From contig CDMY01000844.1 in assembly GCA_001179505.1 (NCBI GenBank), positions 1 to 15,827 of the forward strand: a stretch of DNA of 15,827 nucleotides, written 5' to 3'. This stretch comes from Vitrella brassicaformis CCMP3155 (Eukaryota > Protista > Chromerida). Of the stretch, positions 1 through 13,976 are shown one piece after another (positions within the stretch are counted from its first letter, which is position 1; each line of letters begins with the position of its first letter). A program made the translations under genes and the position numbers. The notes below the pieces were generated by a model. It was not told where the DNA came from and made no database searches. It was given only the letters and a program-made list of their open reading frames with translations.

Positions 1-584
1 CCCGCACCAGGTCCCCAGCGCCCTCCGCTCCTCGCCGTCACCCTCCTGCACACGTAGTACATGATACACACATCGATACAGACAGACGGACAGACAGACA
101 GACAGACAGACGTTCACAGTCTGTATGTGTTATGTGTAATGTGCTGTCCGCCCACCTTTGGGGTAAAGGCGTCATCACCTTCCTGTACTCAGACAAACAA
201 ACACCCACACACAGGCACATACATGGCTGGTCTGCGAGCGCTAAGTATGTGTGTGTGTGTGTCTGTGTGCTCCCGCACCCACCTCAAGATCGTCGTCATC
301 TTCGTCGCCACCACCTTCGGAGTCCTCAGGAGGGATCTCAGGCTCCTCGGGGACAGTCACCTCCTGCAAACACATGACACACACACACAAAGCAGCGACA
401 GATAGACAAGCGTGCACATGCATAGTGCAGAGAGACCACAGGTGGGTGGCCGTGAATTTCTTACGGTCGACGGATCAGTGACGGCCGTGGACTCCTGCAG
501 CTTGCGCAGGGAGGGTGGGTGCTTCATGTCAGCAGCAACACCGGCCACCAGGAGGGCACCAACAAGGCACAGAAACAGCTTCAT
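1..584 (-). CDS. Gene A: secreted prepropeptide-family member, 3' end runs off the window
   Basis: Exons 584-465 (MKLFLCLVGALLVAGVAADMKHPPSLRKLQESTAVTDPST), 363-283 (EVTVPEEPEIPPEDSEGGGDEDDDDLE), 182-156 (EGDDAFTPK) and 45-<1 (EGDGEERRALGTWCG...). All introns are GT-AG and phase 0. The N-terminus is hydrophobic and signal-peptide-like, and exon 1 is near-identical to gene C exon 1. Confidence 0.85.
78..111. repeat. (GACA)n intronic microsatellite
   Basis: Direct reading, in gene A intron 3. The same class recurs at ~1208-1229, ~1377-1401 and ~9020-9042. Confidence 0.9.
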
Positions 585-1029
585 CGTGGGAGAACAATCC
601 AGGGTTCGGAATGGACTGAACGCACAGATGTAGCACTGGAATGCCGACAGATGGTTGACGAATCAAGCAGGCTGCAAGCGGTCGGAGTCTGATGCAAAAC
701 AGAATGAATGCGAAGAGGCACAAGACAGTTCTCCCTATCCAGCCGGTCTCGGAACATTCCACTTCGCATTCCGGGAACGAACGAACACTCCGCGACTCAC
801 ACCGCGCCGTTCTCTTGGGGCGGGCTAGGGTCGAGGGCGTGCAACAACATATTATCGCGTTTCTGAGCTCACGTTCCCTCTTCTCGCCTGTCCCGTTCCA
901 AATGGGCAATGGGAAAGGGGACAGAGAGGGAGGGATTCCAGCTCCAGAATCGTCATTCCGCTCCAGATCTTCATTCCGCCGTCCGTCGTCAGGTGACTGT
1001 TGTCCTTTGTCGTTTCTCACTTGTTCGCG
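585..1029. promoter_or_regulatory. Putative bidirectional promoter region between genes A and B
   Basis: 445-bp gap between divergent ATGs. The B 5' flank shares tttctcacttgttc (1013-1026) and cttcat(t)ccgcc with the C flank. Promoter function is inferred from geometry only. Confidence 0.5.
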
Positions 1030-1651
1030 ATGAAGCTACTTCTGTGCCTTGCTGGCGCCCTCCTGATGGCCGGTGCTCTGTGCGCCCCAACACCCCTGCG
1101 CAAGCTGGCACCTCAAGAGTCCACGGCCGTCACTGATCCGTCGACCGTAAGCAATGCATGACCACCCACCTGTGCTGCCCTCTATGCCACTGTGCATGTT
1201 CATTTTTCTGTCTGTCTGTCTGTCTGTCTTTCTGTCCTCTCATGGTGTATGCAGAATGTAACCGTTCCCGAGGAGCCTGATCCAGAGATCACCCCTGGCG
1301 ACGAGGTGGGCAAGAGAACACTCACCCATACAGGCAGCGACCCACCCACCCACCCAGGCATAGACCCCTGCACGCCTGTCTGTCTGTCTGTCTGTCTGTC
1401 TGCATGTGTGTGTGCAGGAGGGTGGCGATGATATTGAACTGAGGGCTACGCACTGGCGCCACTATTGCTCTGAGTGCACCTGTGGGCATGGGTACCCTGG
1501 ATGGGCTGAGAACCATGGCAATCACGACCACACCCACGGTTGCCCGTGTAAGTGCCATGGCATGATGCACTACGGTTGTGAGTGTACGTGTGACCATCAC
1601 CATCACCACCATGGCCACGAGCACTACCATGACTGCGAGTGTATGTGTTAG
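1030..1651 (+). CDS. Gene B: secreted His/Cys-rich, metallothionein-like prepropeptide (133 aa)
   Basis: Exons 1030-1146 (MKLLLCLAGALLMAGALCAPTPLRKLAPQESTAVTDPST), 1255-1305 (NVTVPEEPDPEITPGDE) and 1418-1651 (EGGDDIELRATHWRHYCSECTC...HHHHHHGHEHYHDCECMC*). Introns are GT-AG and phase 0. The last 68 aa contain 18 His and 12 Cys in four Cys triads. Confidence 0.85.
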
Positions 1652-2960: not shown

Positions 2961-3839
2961 GATGACACAAGACCCCTTTTCTGACCCTTGTATGTGTGTG
3001 TGGGTGTGTGTGCATGTGTGTACGTGTGTGTGTGTGTCTGCTGTCCGCTGTGTCTGTCGTTTTGCCTCTGCCTGCCTGCCTGCCTGCATTTGAGTCAAGG
3101 CGTACATGTGTCCTCTTGACGTTGCTGCCTGACCTCCTTCCTGTTCTTGGCCAACTGTCCGTGTTCGTGTCTGTTAATATAGCAAGAGACTGTCCGCCGA
3201 TGTGTGTATGTGCACGTATGCGCGCTCGTCCCCAAATGACGGAAAGGGCGGGTGGGTACGATTGGATGACACGGATGAGACGGATGAGACCCACCCCACG
3301 AGGGACGCATGTATTACATGCAGACATAAAGGGAGTCAACAATGCAGCATGCAGTCAACCAAAATGTGCCCTTCCACACATAGTCTCCCCTTTCCGTCGT
3401 TGCCCCCATCACAGTTTGATCGATTTGATGACGTATGTACTGCATACAACTGACACCAACTGGCTGCGGCCTGCCTGAGACGCTCTCTCTCCCTCTCTGG
3501 CCACTGCTCCACACACCACTTCCCAAGGACAGCTCGTGCAGAGCACATCAGATTAGTCAGGCGAAATGATTAGCACAGCACTCAGAAAAAGGAAAACGAG
3601 AACACAGATTCTGAGACCTTCTACGAATTGATTGACCGAAGAGGAAAGAGCAGTCAGCCAGATGGCAGGTGGCGGATAGCAAGGGAAAACGAGCAGGAGA
3701 AGAGGAACAGAACAGTGTGTGCTCACTTGGGTCCTTCATCTGTACCACAAGCGCAGACAGCGATACCAACACTCACACCGATGTGTGTGTCCAGCAAGTG
3801 CGTTGACGCACCAGTGGATGATTTCAATAGTCGCCAGCG

Positions 3840-4591
3840 TCAATAGTCGCCATAGCGCCGATCGGATTCCCACGGGTAGGGGAGGTGGTTGTCGTGGTTC
3901 TGGTTCCTTCGGTGCCTGCGGCGCCACCACCAGGCTGCTCTTCGGTGGCGCCCCCACCACTGCAGAGCTCTCAGCTCAGCCCTGCCATCACCTTCCTGGT
4001 CGTCCTCGCCTTGTGCGGCAGTGAGGTCTTCATCGGGTTTCTCGGTCTCATCTTCCAGCAAGAGACACTCATGGAGATTTTCACACAGACAGTCGCTGTT
4101 CATGTATGATATTTTGCTGGCCAACCTCGATGTCGGCAGGGGGGTAGCCGCACCAGCCCGCCTCCCCGCCGCACCGACCACCCTCCTGCACTCAGCCAAA
4201 CCAATAACGGCACACGGGCATATGGCTGCTCTGCGTGTGCTGCATGTGTGTGTTTGTGTGCGGAAGCTCCGTTGCCCACCCCATCTGTTATATCGTCGCG
4301 AGAGTCGTCGTCATCGTCAACTGCGTAGTTGCCAGGAGTGATCTCAGACTCCTCGGGGACAGTCACCTCCTGCACACACACATCACACACACAGGGGAGC
4401 GACCGATAGACACGCGCATGAACATCCATCGAGGCATACAGAGCAGCACAGGTTGGCCACGCGTTCCTTACCGTCGACGGATCAGTGACGGCCGTGGACT
4501 CCTGCAGCTTGCGCAGGCAGGGTGGGTGCTTCATGTCAGCAGCAACACCGGCCACCAGGAGGGCGCCGACAAGGCACAGAAACAGCTTCAT
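3840..4591 (-). CDS. Gene C: secreted prepropeptide with acidic spacer and Trp/Arg-rich cationic C-terminus (~161 aa); last splice acceptor atypical
   Basis: Exons 4591-4472, 4369-4280 (EVTVPEESEITPGNYAVDDDDDSRDDITDG), 4185-4126 (EGGRCGGEAGWCGYPPADIE) and ~4055-3840 (EDETEKPDEDLTAAQGEDDQEGDGRAELRALQWWGRHRRAAWWWRRRHRRNQNHDNHLPYPWESDRRYGDY*). The expected last acceptor reads ttgcTG rather than ttgcAG. In-frame alternative AG acceptors would start the exon at 4067 or 4046. Confidence 0.75.
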
Positions 4592-5000
4592 CGCGGGAGA
4601 ACAAGTGAGAAAATGAAAAGGAAAAACAATCACTGGCAGAAGGAAGGCGGATGAAGAATGTCGAAGGTGCGGATCTGCCCTCCGACACTCTTCCCATTTC
4701 GATCAGAGGTGTTAGGACGAATTCGGTTTTACGCATGCGGTGTCCTGGGACTGGGAACGCGAAGACAGGTGGGACAGATCTCTTCCTCCTCGACAGATCC
4801 CAACTTGAGATTTCACATTGCGCCTTCCTTCCTTTTCAGTTTGTTTTTCCCTTGTCGTATTCTCGCTCGTTCTCCCGATGAAGCTGCTTCTGTGCCTGGT
4901 TGGTGCCCTCCTGGTGGCCGGTGCTCTGTGCGCTGATGACGTGAAGCACCCATCCTCCCTGCGCAAGCTGAGTCCTCAGGGCGTCGCTGATCCGTCGACG
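4472..5000. repeat. Imperfect inverted repeat: exon 1 plus ~90 bp of 5' flank of gene C versus gene D
   Basis: The reverse complement of the C flank (cagatcc...ccgccttccttc...gttctcccgcgATG) aligns by eye with the D flank (cagatcc...gcgccttccttc...gttctcccgATG), and the two exon 1 sequences are paralogous. The spacer is about 100 bp. Confidence 0.7.
4592..4877. promoter_or_regulatory. Putative bidirectional promoter region between gene C and ZIP gene D
   Basis: 286-bp gap between divergent ATGs at 4591 (-) and 4878 (+). Inferred from geometry only. Confidence 0.55.
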
Positions 5001-5084
5001 GTAAGGACATGCAACATGGCCACAACTTGCTCGTGCTGCCTCTCCGTCACCGTGGGTTTGCATGCGTCTGTTTATCCGTCGATC

Positions 5085-5120
<36 letters not shown>

Positions 5121-6045
5121 CAGCAGGGTGATGAAGCTCCTGTGAGGGCGCTGCATGGACCTCACCGCGACCACGATGATGACCATCGCCACGACCATGA
5201 CTACGCCGACCGTGTGGCCCTCGGTTTCGTCATGACCACCATCGCCGGTAGGTACGCACGTGTGCTGCCTGACACGACGCGCACGTTGTCGTGATGTCTT
5301 GCCGGTCACTCATTCGGTGTTGATGTGATGTTTCGCGGGTGCAGGCTTGTCCACTGCTGTGGGCAGCGCCTTGTCCTTCTGCCTTCCCAGGAACAATGGC
5401 AAGGCACGTGTGCTGCAGACACACGTGCCTGGATGGATCCGCACACACTGACTGCCACATCACATCATGTTATATCGGTGTCTGTCCGCAGGTGTTTGCG
5501 GTGTTGTGCATGTCTCTGTCTGCGGGCGTCATGCTCTACGTGTCCTTCGGGGAGATCCTCAGCAAAAGCATCGTACGATCGATCGATCGACATGCGCGCA
5601 CACGCACTCCCAAGAGCGCGTACGTGTTTGTACATATATGCACATTTTGTATGTGTTGTGTGCAATGAATAGGACGAGTTTCGTGAGGCGATTAGCGACG
5701 GGGGGGAGGCGTACGCCTACGCTACGCTGTGCTTTTTCGGCGGTATGCTCACACGCATACATACCCACATGTGGCCACACAAACATACACCTGCACACAA
5801 AACAAACAATATACCTATGTGTGCATCATTCGACAGGTATCCTTGCGGCGATGCTGCTCGACTACGCCCTGGATTCCATGTTCAAAGTACTTGAAGCCAA
5901 CACTCACTCCATGGACACACAATGACATGCACAAACATGCGAATGATGCCGTGACTCGCGTGTGCAGTGGATCCAGACCGAGCCCGAGGCGCCCAGCAAC
6001 AGCAGCCCAGTGCCCGACGAAGTCCCCAAGGTATGAAGTGCATGC

Positions 6046-6076
<31 letters not shown>

Positions 6077-7806
6077 GGAGAGACACGATATTACGTGCCA
6101 CACATGACGATTGACTGACGTGCACGTACACATGTATGTGGCTGCAGAGTGGGGCAGACCGGGAGCAGCAGCAAGAGGAACGTAACAACACTGAGCAAGG
6201 TGCGCACACCACACAAACGGAAACGCATGGATGGATGGATGGATGGAATGGCAGGCGGTTGCGATGGAGGCGCTCTCGCTCGAGAAAAGGTACTGTGTGG
6301 AGAGCAAGTAGCTGTGGTGAGTGCACACACCACAGACGACACGCACACACGCACATGCAAATATATACACATGATATATATATGCATGTGTACCTACCTA
6401 CCTACCTACCTCTGTACGTCATGTCCGCGCACACATGTCATGTGTCAATCAATAAAGGTGATTGAGCAGTCTCTCTGCGGCGATGATAAGATGGCCAGGA
6501 CGCCGTCAACCGACTGTGAAGGTACGTCATTCACGCCACGCCTCCGTTCACACGTATGTATGAGTGTGAACAGCACATCTCTCTCACACTACATATGGGT
6601 ATGTGTGTGTGTGTGTGTGTGTGTGTTCCTGTGCAGGTGCTGGGAGTCCGGACCAGCGCAGCACATCAGAAGACAACCCGAAGAAGGTCCATCTATCCGT
6701 CCGTCCGTCCGTAAATGCATACATGTGTGCGCGTCGTGTGTATTAAGGGTTCGTTGGAGAAGCAGTGGGCTGACAGAGCGGCCCTCAAAAGCCTCGGGAT
6801 ATTCAGGTACGTACGTACGTACGTACGTACGTACGTGGAACAAAGCGCCGACACATACACATATACACACATGTATGTCTTCTATGACTGCAATAAATAT
6901 CGGTTCGGTTTATCACCGATCGACCAGCGGTCTTGCACTAGCTATGCACAACTTCCCCGAAGGTTTGGCCACGTTCGCTGCGACACTGGCGGATCCAACC
7001 TTCGGACTCGGTACGTGCCACACACCCGCATCGCACACACGCCATGGATACACATTCATTGGTGTGTGCACACAGGGGTGGCCGTTGCCATCGCCATCCA
7101 CAATATTCCCGAGGGAATCGCCGTCAGGTATCCACACGCACAGATGGGTGCACGCACGGGCACAATGCCGCCGCTGTGCTTGTGCACATTCGATCAGTGT
7201 GCCGATCTTCTACGCAACGGGCAGCAAGTGGAAGGCATTCGGTACGTCCATACACATGCATACACGCACACATACACATGCATGTGTGTGCCTTTGTGTG
7301 GGTGTGTGTACAGGCTGGTCGCTGCTCAGTGGCCTAGCCGAGCCAGTCGGGGCTCTACTAGGTCAGTGAGTCAAGTGATTGCATCCATGCATTTGTCTGT
7401 CCACGCGCTCTCAAATGCATGTCTGCATGAATGCCACTCAGGCTACCTGGTGCTGATTCACGTGATGTCGCCCACTGCATTCGCCATTCTGTTCGGTACG
7501 TCTGTCTGCACGTGTGTGTGCACCCACCCGTGAGCACGCATTGTTGTCTTGTTGTGTCTCGATGGGGCTTGGCTTGCAGGTTTGGTGGGAGGTATCATGA
7601 TTCATATATGCATCAAGAAGCTGATACCCACCGCACTCAAATACGACCCACAAGTACGCCATCCACACACAGGTCCATCCTTCCTTCCGTCCAAACACAT
7701 GTACACGGTTGTGTATGTGTGTGTTTAGGATCGTGTGACGTCAAACACGTGTCTGGTGGGGATGGCCGTCATGGCCCTCTCGCTGGTGCTTTTCCAAGTC
7801 GTCTGA
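4878..7806 (+). CDS. zupT: Gene D: ZIP-family divalent metal (Zn/Fe/Mn) transporter, ZupT/GufA-like, ~420 aa, 19 exons, with family signal/pro-leader and His/Asp-rich N-terminal segment
   Basis: Exons 4878-5000, 5124-5247, 5345-5403, 5492-5572, 5673-5742, 5837-5886, 5968-6030, 6148-6199, 6255-6289, 6458-6521, 6637-6686, 6748-6806, 6928-7010, 7076-7127, 7198-7241, 7314-7361, 7442-7495, 7580-7653 and 7729-7806 splice into one open frame of 1263 nt. Motifs include MSLSAGVMLYVSF, TM4 HNFPEG (6947-6964), TM5 HNIPEG (7099-7116), SVPIFYATGSKWKAF and SGLAEPVGALLG. One GC-AG intron starts at 5404. Confidence 0.95.
5087..5116. repeat. (TG)n intronic microsatellite upstream of a splice acceptor
   Basis: Direct reading, ZIP intron 1. 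Similar TG tracts precede many acceptors in the window. Confidence 0.9.
6807..6834. repeat. (GTAC)7 self-complementary microsatellite starting exactly at a splice donor
   Basis: attcag|gtacgtacgtacgtacgtacgtacgtacgt in ZIP intron 12. Confidence 0.95.
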
Positions 7807-8919: not shown

Positions 8920-9226
8920 ACCTTCGAAGGAGTGCCAGACAGACAGGCAGAGACCCAGTGGCCAGCGTCCATGGACTGATGGACAGACAGACAGACAAGT
9001 GACGAACAGAGAGAGAGAAAGACAGACAGACAGACAGACAGACCGGTCAACCAACGGACGATCGATCGGGAATTCGTTACATGAGTCGCATACGTTCTGT
9101 ATTACGTCAATGTCTCTTACATTAATTCGAGCGCTGATCAGTGATTGATTGATCGATTGATTGATTGGCTTTCTTTCTTCTCTTGTCGCGTCGCATTGAG
9201 ACGAGTGAGTGAGTGAGTAAGTAGAA

Positions 9227-10959
9227 ATGGCAACTGGGCGGTCCGCCCGGCCCAGGCCACCCAGCAAAACTCCGCCACCATCAGCGGCACGCAATCGCTA
9301 TGCAGTCGGCACACAATCACTCACCACACAATCACCCGGCAACGCACACACATTGGTCACTCACGCCTGTACATGTGTTGTCTGATGTTTTTCTTTCGTT
9401 CAGTGATCCGCAATGTGCTCCGCACTGTGTTCGGGAGCATCGCCTACATCCGCGAATTGTTCCCCGAGGACTGCTTCGAGGAGAAGACCATCAGTGAGTC
9501 ACCGAGAGAGGCGACACATGTGTGTCTCTCTCCGTTTGTGTTGTGGCTGCGCGTTGTCTGTGCGTGTAGGTGAGCTGCCGTTGAAGATTTTGCGGCCCAA
9601 GGACGAGCACAGCGAGGCGGCGAAGCTGCACGCATGGCTCGACAAGAAGTGCCTCCGGTCAGCCAGGGATGCACTCTTGTGTGTGTGTCTTGTGCTGTGC
9701 TGTGTCGTGTGGACGGATGTATGGATGGATGGATGGATGTGTTGGTGCAGTATGTTGATCTTCGGCATCCATGACTCGTTGACGGACGCGCTGCTCGAGT
9801 CTCACCACTTCAAGGCACACAGACACACACAGAGAGAGACACTCACCACGCCACGCCCATCTCTCTCTCCATGTCTCTCTCTCTGTGTGTGTGAGTGTGT
9901 GTGTGCAGTTTGCCTACGACAACAGTGTGAGTGTGGACGTGGATCGCGACAACGGCGACCCACAGGCACAGCCGAGTGCGAGCGCCAGTGCCAGTGGAGT
10001 GTCCAAGGAGGAGGCCAAGAAACAGGCCACATCGATGCTGCTGAACCTCATCTTCCTCACAAGTAAGTCAGTCAACTCAGCCATTCGACACCCACACCAC
10101 ACACACTGACCTCCATCCCCCCTGTCTGTCTGTCTGTCTGTCTTTCTGTGTGTCTTTAGAGGAGCTCAGCCCGCTGCCAGGCAGGCCAAGCCCATCAACA
10201 CATACACAAGATGAGATAGATGCTCATCCTTACTGTCTTTCCCTCTGTGTGTGTGTGTGTGTGTGTGTGAGTGTGCAGATGACCGCTACCTGACCATGAA
10301 GATGATGTGAGCAGCTGTCGTCCGCCATCGGATCGGATAATTGAATCGAATTGCACACAGTGAGTCGTCCGCCACTATGTGAGCAGCGGCTTGAGGGAGT
10401 GCTTCTCAAGCCGTCCATCTGTGTGTGTGTGTGTGTGCAGGTGACGTGTGTGAGTTTGGCTGCGATGATCGAGCAGGACGAGGAAATCGCACAGTGCATA
10501 ATCGAGCAGTGAGTCACTGCCACACACACACACACACACACACAGATTGCCGTGTCATTCTCTGTCGTCAGGCTGCAGGAGAGCGGCTTGCTGAGTACAA
10601 GTGACCACATGGGCAAAGGCTTCATGGTGCCGCGACACACACACAACAACTCGCAGCAACATCAAGGTACAAAAGACACACACACAACACCTCTCGTCTA
10701 ATGCCATCTCATCTCTCTCGTCCGTCAGTGTCGCGCAAGCGTGGTCGTGCGGCGGTGGACGACGACAAGTCGTCGCACAGTGAGAACGGCGCCGACGACA
10801 AGAAGGGACGGCAGTCGATCAGAAGCCCCGGCCACGGACTCTCGTAACCACACCACACCACACACGGATGGATGGATGTCCCTGTATGTGTCTCTGTGTG
10901 TGTGTGTGTGTGTGTGTGTCAGGAAACGGCCGTGCCGCACACTGCCGATGCTCAAGTGA
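9227..10959 (+). pseudogene. HOP1: HOP1/ASY1/HORMAD-like meiotic axis gene (HORMA + winged helix), probably disrupted
   Basis: Exons ~9227-9304, 9404-9493 (MIRNVLRTVFGSIAYIRELFPEDCFEEKTI), 9570-9657, 9751-9814, 9909-10062, 10160-10180 (KELSPLP), 10279-10306 (DDRYLTMKM), 10441-10508, 10572-10666, 10729-10843 and 10923-10959. The HORMA identity is clear. Lesions: ATG 9227 is out of frame with the conserved frame, WL..KK lacks the usual E-GVFDAL, the YY..P..YxPPxF segment is absent, and exon 7 to 8 splicing yields ATG-TGA. Confidence 0.75.
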
Positions 10960-12018: not shown

Positions 12019-13976
12019 TCACTGTCGGTCCGCCAGCGGGCTCTGCAGCGAGCATGCATTGTCGACGGGGCACATGGACACGATGCTGAGACCCGCACAT
12101 CTCAAGGCTTCCCTGACATCGTCTATTGTCGCCTGCGATGGTTCAGGTGTCCGGGAGTATACCACACCGCCATCGTACCCGCACCAGGCGTCGTTGCATC
12201 CCATGTAGTACACAATGAAATACCTGATCGATCGATACACACATTGTTCACGCATGGAGGTGAATTTGTTCTTTCTTGCGGCCCACCTTTCAGGGTCGGC
12301 AGACAGAATGTACCAATCGTCGGATTGGTGTAGGTAGGTCGGGTCGTGGCTACGAAGCACTCCCGGAGAGCTCCTATGGGGAAAGAAGACCTGCTCCACA
12401 TGGCGGGTGAAAAATGGCTGTTTGTCACCACCCTGAATGAATCACACACGAAGGCAAAGACATACAGCACTGTGACCGACTGTTCTGTGTGTATGGTGCA
12501 GCGCTTCTTACATGGGGCACTGGTACCCGATAGGAGATATCGAATCTCACCCCATTGGCCGCCGTCCAAGCGCCATTCTTCCATCTCATTATCGGATGAG
12601 GAGCGCCATCATCCGAACGGACCGCCTCTGAAGTCTTGCCCTGACACACACACACACCACACACACACGTGTGTGGCACACCGGATGTGTAAGCAAGGGA
12701 TGTCGGCACATCGTAACACTGCATCCCCTATCTAATGAGGGCGATCCAGCTGACTCAGCGCCGATAAGCTAAAACCATCAAGGCAAGACGCCACGGATGG
12801 TCTCGGCAATTCGTGTCAGCACTGAGGTGAGTCGGTCAGGCACTCACAGCTCGACCAACAAGGAAGCAGTGCTCTCCCTGTCTACACGTTTGTCTGTCCT
12901 GTCTCTCTGTACTCACAGCTGGATATGTACGGTACGTAGGTATAGATGTATAAATGTCTTACCGGTGCGCTTTTGACGACTGAAGCAGTGTGGTGCTGAC
13001 AAGGGAAGCAGTCAAACACGGGGTTCAATCCATAGACAACCCACCACTCTCCCTGACAACCAGCAGAAAACCATGAAAGAAGAACTTCTTCCTCCCTTGT
13101 TCCTTCCGTCGTCCCACCTGCAGAGCGGCAGGCTCCAGTGCGGCGACGACAGGAATCCTCCTGTCGACCTCAGAAGCGCCAGGCAGCTGCCTGGCCACCT
13201 GCTCGCTCTTGCCCTGGTCATCCCGGACGCGCCCCTCCGCGGCATGTCTGTCGATCCTCTGAGGGATGACCTGGTGCTCGCTTATCGCGCATATGTGGAA
13301 CTCCTTTAGCACGTCCTCTTCGTACAAGTCGCCACATCTCATCTGGCACGCGATGTCGTCCATCCCACACTTCATGAGGCACACAAACTCGTGAAGACCC
13401 CGCCGGTCACTCATCGCCCGAAGCAAAGGACCACCGCATTTAGTCAGCAGGCCTGAATAACACAAGGCATAACAGCAATTCGTATGTGCAACAGCATCCG
13501 GATGTGCTGATACCATAGTAGTCGACGGAGCTCCTTGTCGACAGTGAGAAGACGCTCTGGCGTTTTCTTATCAGCGTATCATCCGGCGCCATGGCGCTTC
13601 TGCTGAGCCCATCCATCATAGCCTCTCTCTGCGCCGCATCGTAAGGTCTGCCGATCACATACAAAGACACCACGATCCCCAGCACAGCTACCCCAGCAAG
13701 AAGTCGCCTCCACAAGAGCGGAATGGGGCCCTCCCTTCTTCTTTGCCCTCCTTCTCCAGCACCCTTTTGCTTCCTTGGAGGCTTGGAAAGCCCGCGCTGG
13801 TGGTCACCATGACGCTGATCGGCAGATTGATCCAAGGGAGCATGAAGGGAAGCCCGGTCCTCTGTTCTTCTGGCTGAGTGGCGGACGGAAGGTCGGGGTG
13901 CTGCGAGAGGCTTGATGAACATCGGAGGACGGAAGGTGGCGGACGCAGCAAAGATGCCGCCTCGGACGAGTGTCAT
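12019..13976 (-). CDS. VDL: Violaxanthin de-epoxidase-family protein (VDE/VDL-like; Cys-rich domain + lipocalin domain, no Glu-rich tail), ~455 aa, 6 exons
   Basis: Exons 13976-13514, 13452-13118, 13052-12963, 12640-12512, 12432-12287 and 12223-12019 splice in frame (1368 nt). Motifs: CQMRCGDLYE..VLKEFHICA, GEWWVVYGLNPVFDCFPCQHH, FFTRHVEQ, PGVLRSHDPTYLHQSDDWYILS, YFIVYYMGCNDAWCGYDGGVVYSR, VDNAC, all parallel to plant VDE. The start codon is uncertain, and extra micro-exons within 12962-12641 cannot be excluded. Confidence 0.9.

What the first reader, a model, noticed from the sequence alone, without database searches (positions are those of the whole stretch)
1418..1651. Secreted metallothionein-like peptide with four His-rich modules each ending in a Cys triad
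Seen: the 68-aa region after ELR has 18 His and 12 Cys arranged as HYCSECTC, HTHGCPCKC, HYGCECTC and HYHDCECMC, with a His6 run. Established: CxC motifs and poly-His bind Zn/Cu/Ni/Cd, and classical metallothioneins are cytosolic without signal peptides. Inference: this is a novel extracellular metal chelator (scavenging or detoxifying), or a disulfide-bonded His-rich wall or defence peptide.
Basis: partly seen in the sequence, partly recalled or inferred. Interest (0 to 1): 0.85.

Follow-up and report, generated by a model that had tools for sequence, protein, structure and literature searches.

The report
Unannotated secreted His/Cys-rich peptide gene
The alga Vitrella brassicaformis has an unlisted three-exon gene for a small secretory peptide packed with histidine and cysteine, which borrows the signal leader of a neighbouring zinc-family (ZIP) transporter and so is a candidate extracellular metal-capturing partner for it, though no metal binding or function has been tested.

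Summary
The 68 residues after ELR (1445-1648) have 18 His and 12 Cys, in four His-led Cys triads, plus a His6 run. This layout is far from chance (2 of 2,000,000 shuffles).

It is the last exon of a three-exon gene (1030-1146, 1255-1305, 1418-1651; 133 aa). The window is the whole contig CDMY01000844.1 of Vitrella brassicaformis, and its annotation does not call this gene.

The leader exon has four copies in the window. One heads a ZIP metal transporter, where a transcript confirms it. Another heads a small gene whose mRNA uses the matching splice sites.

The His/Cys cargo has no relative in 1.84 billion representative proteins, Pfam or PDB. It fails the membership tests for metallothioneins and for the fungal zincophore Pra1.

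Transcription and splicing of this gene are supported only indirectly, by word shares in sequencing runs.

Best reading (about 0.45): a secretory, probably processed, Zn-type metal-binding peptide linked to the ZIP. Rivals are a metal buffer, a disulfide-bonded peptide, or a young gene of little function.

The scan noted other Cys/His-rich genes elsewhere in this genome, none detectably related.

The parts
930..1029 (+). Proximal upstream region / 5' UTR, homologous among genes A, B and the ZIP gene
   Evidence: DNA alignments A1 and A2. The gene B transcript L002 starts about 89 nt upstream of its ATG in the homologous stretch.
1030..1146 (+). Exon 1: signal peptide (MK + 15 uncharged hydrophobic/small residues, predicted cut after Cys18), then a conserved L-R-K-L ... 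T-D-P-S-T segment
   Evidence: Four copies of this exon in the window at 3 or fewer mismatches in 46 nt, with 0 expected by chance. BLASTP E 1e-12 to the ZIP leader and to gene B. GTAAGC donor at 1147.
1147..1254 (+). Intron 1 (108 nt, GT-AG, contains (TCTG)n)
   Evidence: The homologous intron is removed in the gene B mRNA L002. RNA-type runs hold 8% or less of the words of 1147-1417.
1255..1305 (+). Exon 2: acidic Pro/Glu-rich spacer (NVTVPEEPDPEITPGDE) with an N-x-T sequon
   Evidence: In frame. Homologous to exon 2 of genes B and D (EVTVPEE...), which is present in the spliced mRNA L002.
1306..1417 (+). Intron 2 (112 nt, GTGGGC...CAG, contains (CTGT)n)
   Evidence: Same donor and acceptor sequences as the confirmed gene B intron.
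1418..1444 (+). Start of exon 3: conserved junction E-G-G-D-D-I-E-L-R, with R-A shared by all four paralogs; candidate processing site
   Evidence: DNA alignment A3 and the protein junction comparison. Cleavage itself is inferred.
1445..1648 (+). 68-aa His/Cys-rich cargo (18 His, 12 Cys): four His-led Cys triads at 1460-1483, 1535-1555, 1568-1591 and 1622-1648, and His6 at 1595-1612. Stop codon at 1649-1651.
   Evidence: No relatives found. AlphaFold2 single-sequence pLDDT 44.5.
1..584 (-). Paralog D (head-to-head with A): same leader, acidic exons, junction EGDGEERRAL, cargo cut off by the contig end
   Evidence: Annotated as a 91-aa partial product, which matches my four-exon model.
3297..4680 (-). 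Paralog B (tail-to-tail with A, head-to-head with the ZIP gene): 116-aa product P0003. The mRNA is seen as JGI transcript contig L002.
4878..7806 (+). ZIP (ZupT/GufA-type) transporter gene of about 19 exons. Its first exon is the same leader. Its second exon starts with the same junction (QGDEAPVRAL), followed by a His/Asp-rich ectodomain and TM1.
   Evidence: Pfam Zip E 1.5e-10, 41.3 bits against a cut-off of 35.1. BbZIP 5TSA E 1.7e-4. Transcript-derived proteins P0004/P0005 and contig L003.

Best explanation
Window 1030-1651 (+) is a real but unannotated three-exon gene of Vitrella brassicaformis. It arose when the 5' module of a ZIP transporter gene was duplicated. That module comprises the proximal upstream region, the signal-peptide exon and the first 13 or so codons of the next exon. 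In this copy it was joined to an acidic spacer exon and a new cargo.

The 133-aa product enters the ER through a cleavable signal peptide. It carries a 47-aa acidic Pro/Thr/Glu-rich pro-region. It is probably cut at or near the Arg-Ala junction that all four paralogs share.

The released or exposed 68-aa domain has 12 Cys and 18 His, built by internal duplication of an H-G-x-x-H-Y-x-C-x-C-x-C unit. It binds soft or borderline divalent metals, most likely Zn and possibly Cu, Ni, Co or Cd, on the extracytosolic side.

There it would act on the same face of the membrane as the His/Asp-rich ectodomain of the neighbouring ZIP importer. It would capture or concentrate metal for uptake, working like a zincophore.

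Shown: the sequence, the gene architecture, leader homology to a transcript-verified ZIP leader, the clustering, and the absence of relatives. Inferred: signal cleavage, pro-peptide processing, metal binding, metal identity and hand-off to the ZIP.
For: 1. Composition and motif layout are exact and non-random.

2. The introns are canonical GT-AG and in frame. Their donor and acceptor sequences match those of paralog B, whose spliced mRNA is on record as L002 and maps at 99-100% identity.

3. The leader exon occurs four times in the window. On the ZIP gene it is present in the transcript-derived proteins P0004/P0005 and in contig L003. ZIP proteins have an extracytosolic N-terminus (established topology of ZIP4 and BbZIP), so the leader is a working signal peptide.

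4. The leader of A is 64% identical to the ZIP leader and 67% to that of B (E 1e-12 each). The 5' UTR and intron 1 are also homologous.

5. Runs X1, X2, X6 and X8 hold 50-62% of the words of 1000-2100 but only 4-8% of the intron-bearing stretch 1147-1417. DNA runs hold 56-80% of that stretch. This is the signature of a spliced RNA.

6. Between internal modules 1 and 3, the shared H-Y...E-C-T-C codons differ only at synonymous sites (TAT/TAC, TGC/TGT, ACC/ACG). That hints at purifying selection in this frame.

7. Precedents: the fungal genes PRA1 and ZRT1 share an intergenic region, and Pra1 has flexible C-terminal His-rich regions and a CHTHxxGxxHC motif (PMC3386192, PMC12663325). The diatom protein ZCRP-B is proposed as a surface Zn ligand feeding ZIPs, and Cys-containing ligands enhance Zn uptake (PMC9010474).
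Against:
- No predicted protein in the 15-billion-protein collections contains exon 3, although the transcript-derived products of neighbours B and ZIP are there. Expression is therefore probably low or conditional.
- There is no ortholog, so no evolutionary test of constraint is possible.
- Paralog B's mRNA reads its last exon in a different frame from the one homologous to A, C and D. This suggests the family is in flux and some members may be decaying.
- Free thiols are unstable outside the cell, and 12 Cys could equally form 6 disulfides.
- A's immediate head-to-head partner is D, not the ZIP.
- A consensus donor GTAAGT lies inside exon 3 (1549-1554). An alternative isoform that truncates the cargo is not excluded.
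- AlphaFold2 gives no confident fold. That is neutral for a metal-dependent peptide.
Confidence: 0.45

Rival explanations
1. An extracytosolic metal buffer, store or detoxifier that is not coupled to uptake. The peptide sequesters excess Zn/Cu/Cd in the cell wall, in sporangial layers, or in an acidic lumenal compartment such as a vacuole or acidocalcisome. The acidic pro-region would neutralise the protonated His-rich domain during transit.
For: The composition evidence is the same as for the main reading. The secretory leader is the same. The 47-aa pro-region has 12 Asp/Glu against 3 Arg/Lys. The scan noted several other Cys/His-rich 'metallothionein-like' genes in this genome, which suggests heavy investment in metal handling.
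Against: The gene shares its regulatory and leader module with an importer of the ZIP family, which moves metal into the cytosol. That fits acquisition better than detoxification. There are no expression data under metal excess.
Confidence: 0.2
2. A disulfide-bonded, His-rich structural or defence peptide (wall component or antimicrobial) in which the 12 Cys form six disulfides. His would give pH-dependent charge, and metal capture would not be the function.
For: The Cys count is even and the protein takes the oxidising secretory route. The layout of leader, acidic pro-region, basic processing site and cargo resembles defensin- or hepcidin-type precursors (general knowledge). If cut after Arg65, the N-terminus A-T-H would be an ATCUN-type motif, as in hepcidin and histatin (inference).
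Against: Tightly spaced C-x-C-x-C triads flanked by His are typical of metal-thiolate sites, not of known disulfide knots. At neutral pH the cargo is acidic (8 Asp/Glu against 2 Arg/Lys), unlike cationic antimicrobial peptides. No fold was predicted. There are no relatives among known cysteine-rich peptide families.
Confidence: 0.13
3. A young partial duplicate of the ZIP gene's 5' end that reads into internally duplicated TG/CA-rich simple sequence. It is transcribed at low level, but its product has little or no selected function (a proto-gene or decaying copy).
For: No homolog exists anywhere. It is unannotated and absent from transcript-derived protein sets that do contain neighbours B and ZIP. 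The triad-coding DNA (TGYGAGTGTAYGTGT) resembles the TG-rich simple sequence abundant in this contig. Paralog B shows a frame change relative to the family's ancestral frame.
Against: The frame stays open exactly to the end of the fourth module and uses all 12 Cys in triads. Synonymous-only differences occur between duplicated modules. It is the only such window in six frames of a microsatellite-rich contig. Splice sites are intact. Word shares indicate spliced RNA.
Confidence: 0.2

Closest known systems
Fungal zincophore locus PRA1-ZRT1 / aspf2-zrfC (Candida albicans, Aspergillus fumigatus)
   Same: A secreted metal-capturing protein is encoded next to a ZIP importer, with shared upstream regions (PMC3386192). 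Flexible His-rich, Cys-flanked C-terminal motifs (CHTHxxGxxHC) are implicated in Zn binding (PMC12663325). The ZIP partner has a His-rich extracytosolic N-terminus.
   Different: Pra1 is a roughly 300-aa protein with a deuterolysin-like fold that forms hexamers. Here there is only a 68-aa low-complexity domain with no Pfam or PDB match. Here the peptide and the transporter share the same signal-leader exon by duplication, which is not described for PRA1/ZRT1. Gene A is 3.2 kb from the ZIP start and is head-to-head with paralog D. It is paralog B that shares the 286-bp intergenic region with the ZIP.
Metallothioneins, especially the His-containing ones (cyanobacterial SmtA, wheat Ec-1; from general knowledge)
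   Same: Small size, 17.6% Cys in C-x-C type motifs, His as an additional ligand, and probably disordered without metal.
   Different: This peptide has a signal peptide and pro-region, 26% His, and 4 Tyr plus 2 Trp. It matches no metallothionein Pfam family even at E up to 10.
[quoted passage not shown]
   Same: A lineage-restricted orphan with a signal peptide, poly-Cys domains and a natural His tail. It was shown to bind Fe, Ni and Zn.
   Different: It is a much larger nematode protein with no sequence relation. Its Cys domains and His tail are separate, not interleaved modules. It has no transporter linkage.
Diatom ZCRP-B (PMC9010474)
   Same: It is proposed as a cell-surface Zn/Co ligand that raises local metal concentration for ZIP transporters in a marine alga.
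   Different: ZCRP-B is a NikA-like, membrane-tethered folded protein induced at low Zn. It is not a Cys/His-rich peptide and is not homologous.
Plasmodium HRP2-type and diatom RxL-processed secretory precursors (general knowledge; scan note s1-080120)
   Same: A signal peptide is followed closely by an R-x-L motif (R-K-L here; R-K-L-Q-E in paralogs B and D fits the PEXEL pattern RxLxE/Q/D), then a His-rich cargo. Vitrella is a free-living relative of Apicomplexa.
   Different: No host cell to export into is known, cleavage is untested, and gene A's own motif is R-K-L-A-P. HRP2 has no Cys triads.

Membership tests
Metallothionein superfamily | Small protein with high Cys content arranged in C-x-C / C-x-x-C motifs | tested here: met
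   12 Cys in 68 aa (17.6%), all in four C-x(1,2)-C-x-C triads.
Metallothionein superfamily | Few or no aromatic residues and (classically) few His | tested here: not met
   18 His, 4 Tyr and 2 Trp in 68 aa.
Metallothionein superfamily | Sequence match to a recognised metallothionein family | tested here: not met
   Pfam gives 0 families at E up to 10. PDB sequences give only a His-tag match at E 3.8. No true hit among 1.84 billion representatives.
Metallothionein superfamily | Cytosolic, no signal peptide | tested here: not met
   In-frame leader exon homologous to the leader of a transcript-verified ZIP.
Metallothionein superfamily | Forms metal-thiolate clusters | not testable with these tools
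   Needs metal titration and spectroscopy of the peptide.
Pra1/AspF2 zincophores | Deuterolysin-like HRXXH core domain of about 250 aa | tested here: not met
   The whole product is 133 aa. There is no Pfam or PDB match and no confident fold.
Pra1/AspF2 zincophores | C-terminal CHTHxxGxxHC motif | tested here: not met
   The nearest string is H-D-H-T-H-G-C-P-C-K-C-H-G, which resembles the motif but is not it (motif from PMC12663325).
Pra1/AspF2 zincophores | Encoded next to a ZIP importer and sharing its upstream intergenic region | tested here: inconclusive
   It lies in the same 8-kb cluster with homologous 5' regions. But A shares its intergenic region with paralog D, and paralog B is the one head-to-head with the ZIP.
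Pra1/AspF2 zincophores | Zinc-repressed co-expression with the transporter, and re-association with the cell through it | not tested
Secretory proteins with cleavable signal peptide | N-terminal n-, h- and c-regions with small residues at -3/-1 | tested here: met
   MK, then 15 uncharged hydrophobic/small residues, then A-L-C|A, read by the von Heijne rule. No predictor tool was available. The leader is shared with an N-out membrane transporter.
ZIP transporters (PF02535), for the neighbouring gene C and not the peptide | Match to the Zip domain, including the paired HN-x-PEG motifs of TM4/TM5 | tested here: met
   Pfam Zip E 1.5e-10, above the gathering score. BbZIP 5TSA E 1.7e-4. 974 ZIP/ZupT hits.
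RxL / PEXEL-type processed precursors | R-x-L shortly after the signal peptide, cleaved by a dedicated protease | tested here: inconclusive
   R-K-L is present in all four leaders, and R-A-L at the cargo junction of B, C and D but R-A-T in A. Cleavage is not testable here.

The most novel reading that the evidence does not exclude
Vitrella runs a protein zincophore system of a new type. A ZIP importer has spawned, by duplication of its own promoter-proximal region, signal-leader exon and ectodomain start, a small family of secreted peptides. The His/Cys-rich member (gene A) captures Zn, or Co/Cu, outside the cell and hands it to the His/Asp ectodomain of the parent transporter. This would be the first peptide zincophore outside fungi, the first secreted metallothionein-type ligand tied to a transporter, and a genetically defined source of the strong Zn-binding ligands found in seawater.
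Probability: 0.22. Interest if true: 0.8.

Novelty: new variant of a known kind. Interest (0 to 1): 0.55.

Why it matters
Marine phytoplankton live at picomolar free zinc, and most dissolved Zn is bound to organic ligands of unknown origin. Only one algal surface Zn ligand has been proposed so far, the diatom protein ZCRP-B (PMC9010474). Protein zincophores are known only from fungi (PMC3386192).

A gene-encoded, secreted Cys/His peptide physically and evolutionarily tied to a ZIP importer would give a directly testable candidate in a culturable alga. That alga is also the closest free-living relative of apicomplexan parasites.

The locus is also a clean example of new small secreted genes being built by re-using a transporter's 5' module and internally duplicating a short metal-ligand unit.

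Practically, it shows a real gene missing from the reference annotation, and a probably wrong N-terminus for the annotated ZIP.

Tried and rejected
Read evidence
That used the only call, so no junction reads were seen.
- One local six-frame script over the whole window printed a translated window near 2956. That output went nowhere else.

Homolog and family searches
- The search for homologous proteins with exon 3 found no candidate.
- The exhaustive HMMER search returned two hits. Both are long repeat proteins matching an 18-20 residue stretch 13 times, so I rejected them as spurious.
- Pfam, PDB sequences and the ESM Atlas gave nothing usable.
- AlphaFold2 without an alignment gave pLDDT 44.5, so I ran no fold search.

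Metagenome scans
- The search for related loci and an exact leader pattern in metagenome contigs were both blank.
- That collection also fails to return the known JGI transcript L002, which contains the pattern. These blanks are therefore uninformative.

Lookup not run

Readings considered and rejected
- Plastid targeting by a bipartite leader. The region after the signal peptide is strongly acidic, unlike transit peptides (general knowledge), and the same leader serves an N-out ZIP.
- The antisense ORF 1322-1723. It is a mirror of the His-rich low-complexity frame, with no leader or splice support.

Full report
**What is in the sequence**

Window 1418-1651 (+) translates without a stop to 77 residues ending in TAG. 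After E-L-R come 68 residues with exactly 18 His and 12 Cys.

Every Cys lies in one of four triads led by His:
- HYCSECTC, 1460-1483.
- HGCPCKC, 1535-1555.
- HYGCECTC, 1568-1591.
- HYHDCECMC, 1622-1648.

A His6 run lies at 1595-1612.

Shuffling the 68 residues gives four or more triads in 2 of 2,000,000 trials. In a six-frame scan of the whole contig (6,405 stop-free 68-aa windows), no window outside this locus has more than two triads. That is despite abundant TG/CA microsatellites, which translate to CVCV or HTHT.

The modules are related at the DNA level, at 68-79% identity over 19-30 nt. The domain therefore grew by internal duplication of a unit of about 54-57 nt, and the regularity is partly inherited.

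**Gene model**

An ATG at 1030 opens a 39-codon exon ending at a GTAAGC donor. A 51-nt exon follows (1255-1305, donor GTGGGC). Exon 3 (1418-1651) follows in frame after GT-AG introns of 108 and 112 nt. Together they give a 133-aa product:
- a signal peptide (MK, then 15 uncharged hydrophobic/small residues, with A-L-C before the predicted cut);
- a 47-aa Pro/Thr/Glu/Asp-rich pro-region with one N-x-T sequon;
- the His/Cys cargo.

**Where it sits**

The window is the entire contig CDMY01000844.1 of Vitrella brassicaformis CCMP3155, assembly GCA_001179505.1. The annotation there calls:
- a partial 91-aa gene at 584-1 (−);
- a 116-aa gene at 4591-3971 (−);
- a 453-aa Zip-domain gene at 4735-7806 (+);
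- a HORMA gene and a VDE gene.

It calls nothing at 1030-1651. The gene under study is unannotated.

**A family built on one leader**

The first 46 nt of the coding sequence occur four times in the window with 3 or fewer mismatches, where 0 are expected by chance:
- D at 584 (−);
- A at 1030 (+);
- B at 4591 (−);
- C at 4878 (+).

They form two head-to-head pairs, D/A and B/C. The 5' UTR, exon 1 and intron 1 of A, B and C align at 74% mean column identity.

Gene C is a ZupT/GufA-type ZIP. Spliced TM4-TM5 exons hit Pfam Zip at E 1.5e-10, above the gathering score, and BbZIP (5TSA) at E 1.7e-4. A wider search returns 974 ZIP/ZupT proteins.

The top hits P0004 and P0005 come from a JGI transcript assembly of Vitrella (contig L003). 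Their N-termini read leader, then QGDEAPVRAL, then a His/Asp-rich stretch, then TM1. This is identical to my splice model of gene C except for one residue. So the leader is demonstrably part of a ZIP mRNA. ZIPs have their N-terminus outside the cytosol (established topology), so the leader works as a signal peptide.

The leader of A is 64% identical to it and 67% identical to that of B (E 1e-12 each).

Paralog B's spliced mRNA is on record as L002 and maps to 4680-4472, about 4370-4275, 4186-4126 and 4053-3297. Its first two introns use the sites homologous to those I infer for A: GTCGAC(G/C)|GTAAG, GTGCAG|GAGGT, |GTGGGCAA and GTGCAG|GAGGGTGG.

The first 13 or so codons of the cargo exon are also homologous in all four genes, with the pattern [E/Q]-G-x-x-...-R-A-[L/T]. 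Beyond that the sequences are unrelated.

The simplest history is repeated duplication of the ZIP gene's 5' module, with different 3' ends attached.

**Is it expressed?**

Direct read laying failed. 

Indirect evidence comes from word shares in two queries:

| Runs | Share of words, 1000-2100 | Share of words, intron-bearing 1147-1417 |
|---|---|---|
| X1, X2 (RNA?) | 0.52, 0.50 | 0.08, 0.08 |
| X6, X8 (type unknown) | 0.62, 0.61 | 0.04, 0.08 |
| X10-X12 (DNA?) | not listed | 0.56-0.80 |
| X3 (type unknown) | 0.80 | 0.92 |

Runs that hold most of the exons and downstream sequence but almost none of the introns are best explained by a spliced mRNA. For X6 and X8 the arithmetic requires some words from 1418-1651.

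Against strong expression, no predicted protein in the 15-billion-protein collections contains exon 3, although the transcript-derived products of B and the ZIP are there.

The two blank scans of metagenome contigs say nothing. That collection also misses L002, which contains the searched pattern.

**Relatives of the cargo**

There are none:
- The word-index search found no candidate.
- The exhaustive search of 1.84 billion representatives gave only two repeat artefacts.
- Pfam gave none at E up to 10.
- PDB sequences gave only a His-tag match.
- The ESM Atlas top score was 0.64, in the noise.
- AlphaFold2 from the single sequence gives pLDDT 44.5. No fold can be claimed, which is what one expects of a metal-dependent, metallothionein-type peptide but proves nothing.

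**How it most likely works**

Shown: a secretory leader shared with a metal importer, an acidic pro-region, a conserved Arg-Ala junction, and a cargo in which 30 of 68 residues are the two best protein ligands for Zn, Cu, Ni, Co and Cd.

Inferred:
- The signal peptide is removed.
- The precursor is processed near the conserved junction. R-x-L sites occur as R-K-L in all four leaders and as R-A-L at the junction of B, C and D, while A has R-A-T. An earlier scan note on another Vitrella precursor also proposed R-x-L processing.
- Each H...C-x-C-x-C module, together with the His clusters, binds metal on the extracytosolic side.
- The peptide captures or concentrates metal for the ZIP, whose own N-terminal His/Asp ectodomain faces the same space.

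Precedent for this logic comes from the fungal PRA1-ZRT1 locus. There a secreted Zn scavenger shares its upstream region with a ZIP importer, and it has flexible C-terminal His-rich, Cys-flanked motifs (PMC3386192, PMC12663325). In diatoms, ZCRP-B is a proposed surface ligand feeding ZIPs, and Cys-containing ligands enhance Zn uptake (PMC9010474).

A weak hint of selection on the frame: duplicated modules 1 and 3 differ at three synonymous sites and no non-synonymous site in the shared H-Y / E-C-T-C codons.

**Rivals**

- A buffer or store not coupled to uptake (0.20).
- A disulfide-bonded His-rich wall or defence peptide (0.13). Twelve Cys is an even number, and the precursor layout resembles defensin or hepcidin precursors. 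If cut after Arg65, the N-terminus A-T-H would be an ATCUN-type motif.
- A young duplicate with little function (0.20). It has no homologs, is absent from protein sets, and has TG-rich simple-sequence ancestry. Paralog B's mRNA uses a different frame from the ancestral one.

I rejected plastid targeting because the post-signal region is strongly acidic and the same leader serves an N-out transporter.

**Comparison and membership**

The peptide works like a His-containing metallothionein placed in the secretory pathway, and the locus looks like a zincophore-transporter pair. It is a member of neither family.

For metallothioneins it meets the Cys-motif criterion. It fails on aromatic and His content, on sequence match, and on cytosolic location.

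For Pra1 it lacks the core domain and the exact C-terminal motif, and its linkage to the ZIP is through a paralog cluster, not a shared intergenic region.

The nearest analogue in spirit is Ts-PCHTP of Trichinella, an orphan secretory poly-Cys, His-tailed protein shown to bind Fe, Ni and Zn (PMC2954182).

**Verdict**

I class it as a new variant of a known kind, with moderate interest (0.55). The main weaknesses are indirect transcript evidence and the lack of any ortholog.

No paper in the searched library mentions such a gene in Vitrella or a protein zincophore in phytoplankton.

Noticed in passing
window 3840-4053 (-), with L002 358-575: The Trp/Arg-rich reading of paralog B's last exon (scan note s1-233338) is not the frame used by the mRNA on record. 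In L002 exon 3 joins the last exon so that it reads MRPRNPMK...AGLS*, giving the 116-aa product P0003. Yet the Trp/Arg frame is the one homologous to the E-G-D-G...R-A-L junction of A, C and D. So B seems to have shifted frame, or to use an alternative splice site not seen here.
   Followed up: partly
window 4735-4880: The NCBI model of the ZIP gene (453 aa) starts at 4735. That is out of frame with the leader ATG at 4878 used by the transcript-derived proteins P0004/P0005 (429/430 aa). The annotated N-terminus is probably wrong.
   Followed up: partly
window 5404-5491: The third intron of the ZIP gene appears to be GC-AG (AAG|GCACGT...CCGCAG|GTG). It is the only near-canonical way to join the exons as seen in transcript L003.
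   Followed up: partly
L003 1-139 compared with window 859-1000: The 5' UTR of the ZIP transcript contig L003 matches the upstream region of gene A (84%) better than that of gene C. Several internal exons are only 85-94% identical to the window, while the last 696 nt are 100% identical. Either a second, closely related copy of this cluster exists or the transcript contig is a chimera of two copies. P0004 and P0005 also differ in the cytosolic loop.
   Followed up: no
P0006 (Vitrella ZIP paralog, 383 aa): A paralogous Vitrella ZIP starts directly at the segment just before TM1 (MMDDYGDRVVLGF...). It has no leader and no His/Asp ectodomain, so these are an add-on specific to the window's copy, unless P0006 is 5'-truncated.
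   Followed up: no
window 505-519 (-) and 4512-4526 (-): The leaders of paralogs D and B carry R-K-L-Q-E a few residues after the predicted signal cleavage site. This fits the apicomplexan PEXEL pattern RxLxE/Q/D, in a free-living relative of Apicomplexa. A and C have R-K-L-A-P and R-K-L-S-P.
   Followed up: no
window 1549-1554 (+): A perfect consensus splice donor, GTAAGT, lies inside exon 3 (within TGT AAG TGC of module 2). If used, it would cut the cargo after the second triad's second Cys. No evidence either way.
   Followed up: no
window 12019-13616 (-) and 9110-10959 (+): The rest of the contig carries a gene with a VDE lipocalin domain (violaxanthin de-epoxidase-like; Pfam E 1.7e-21 on one exon) and a HORMA-domain gene, according to the annotation table.
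   Followed up: no
window 6807-6836, 1207-1236, 1376-1402, 8982-9043: Tetranucleotide microsatellites ((GTAC)7.5, (TCTG)n, (CTGT)n, (GACA)n) sit inside many introns of this contig. The (CTGT)n words are probably what unrelated runs share with the intron query at 0.08.
   Followed up: no
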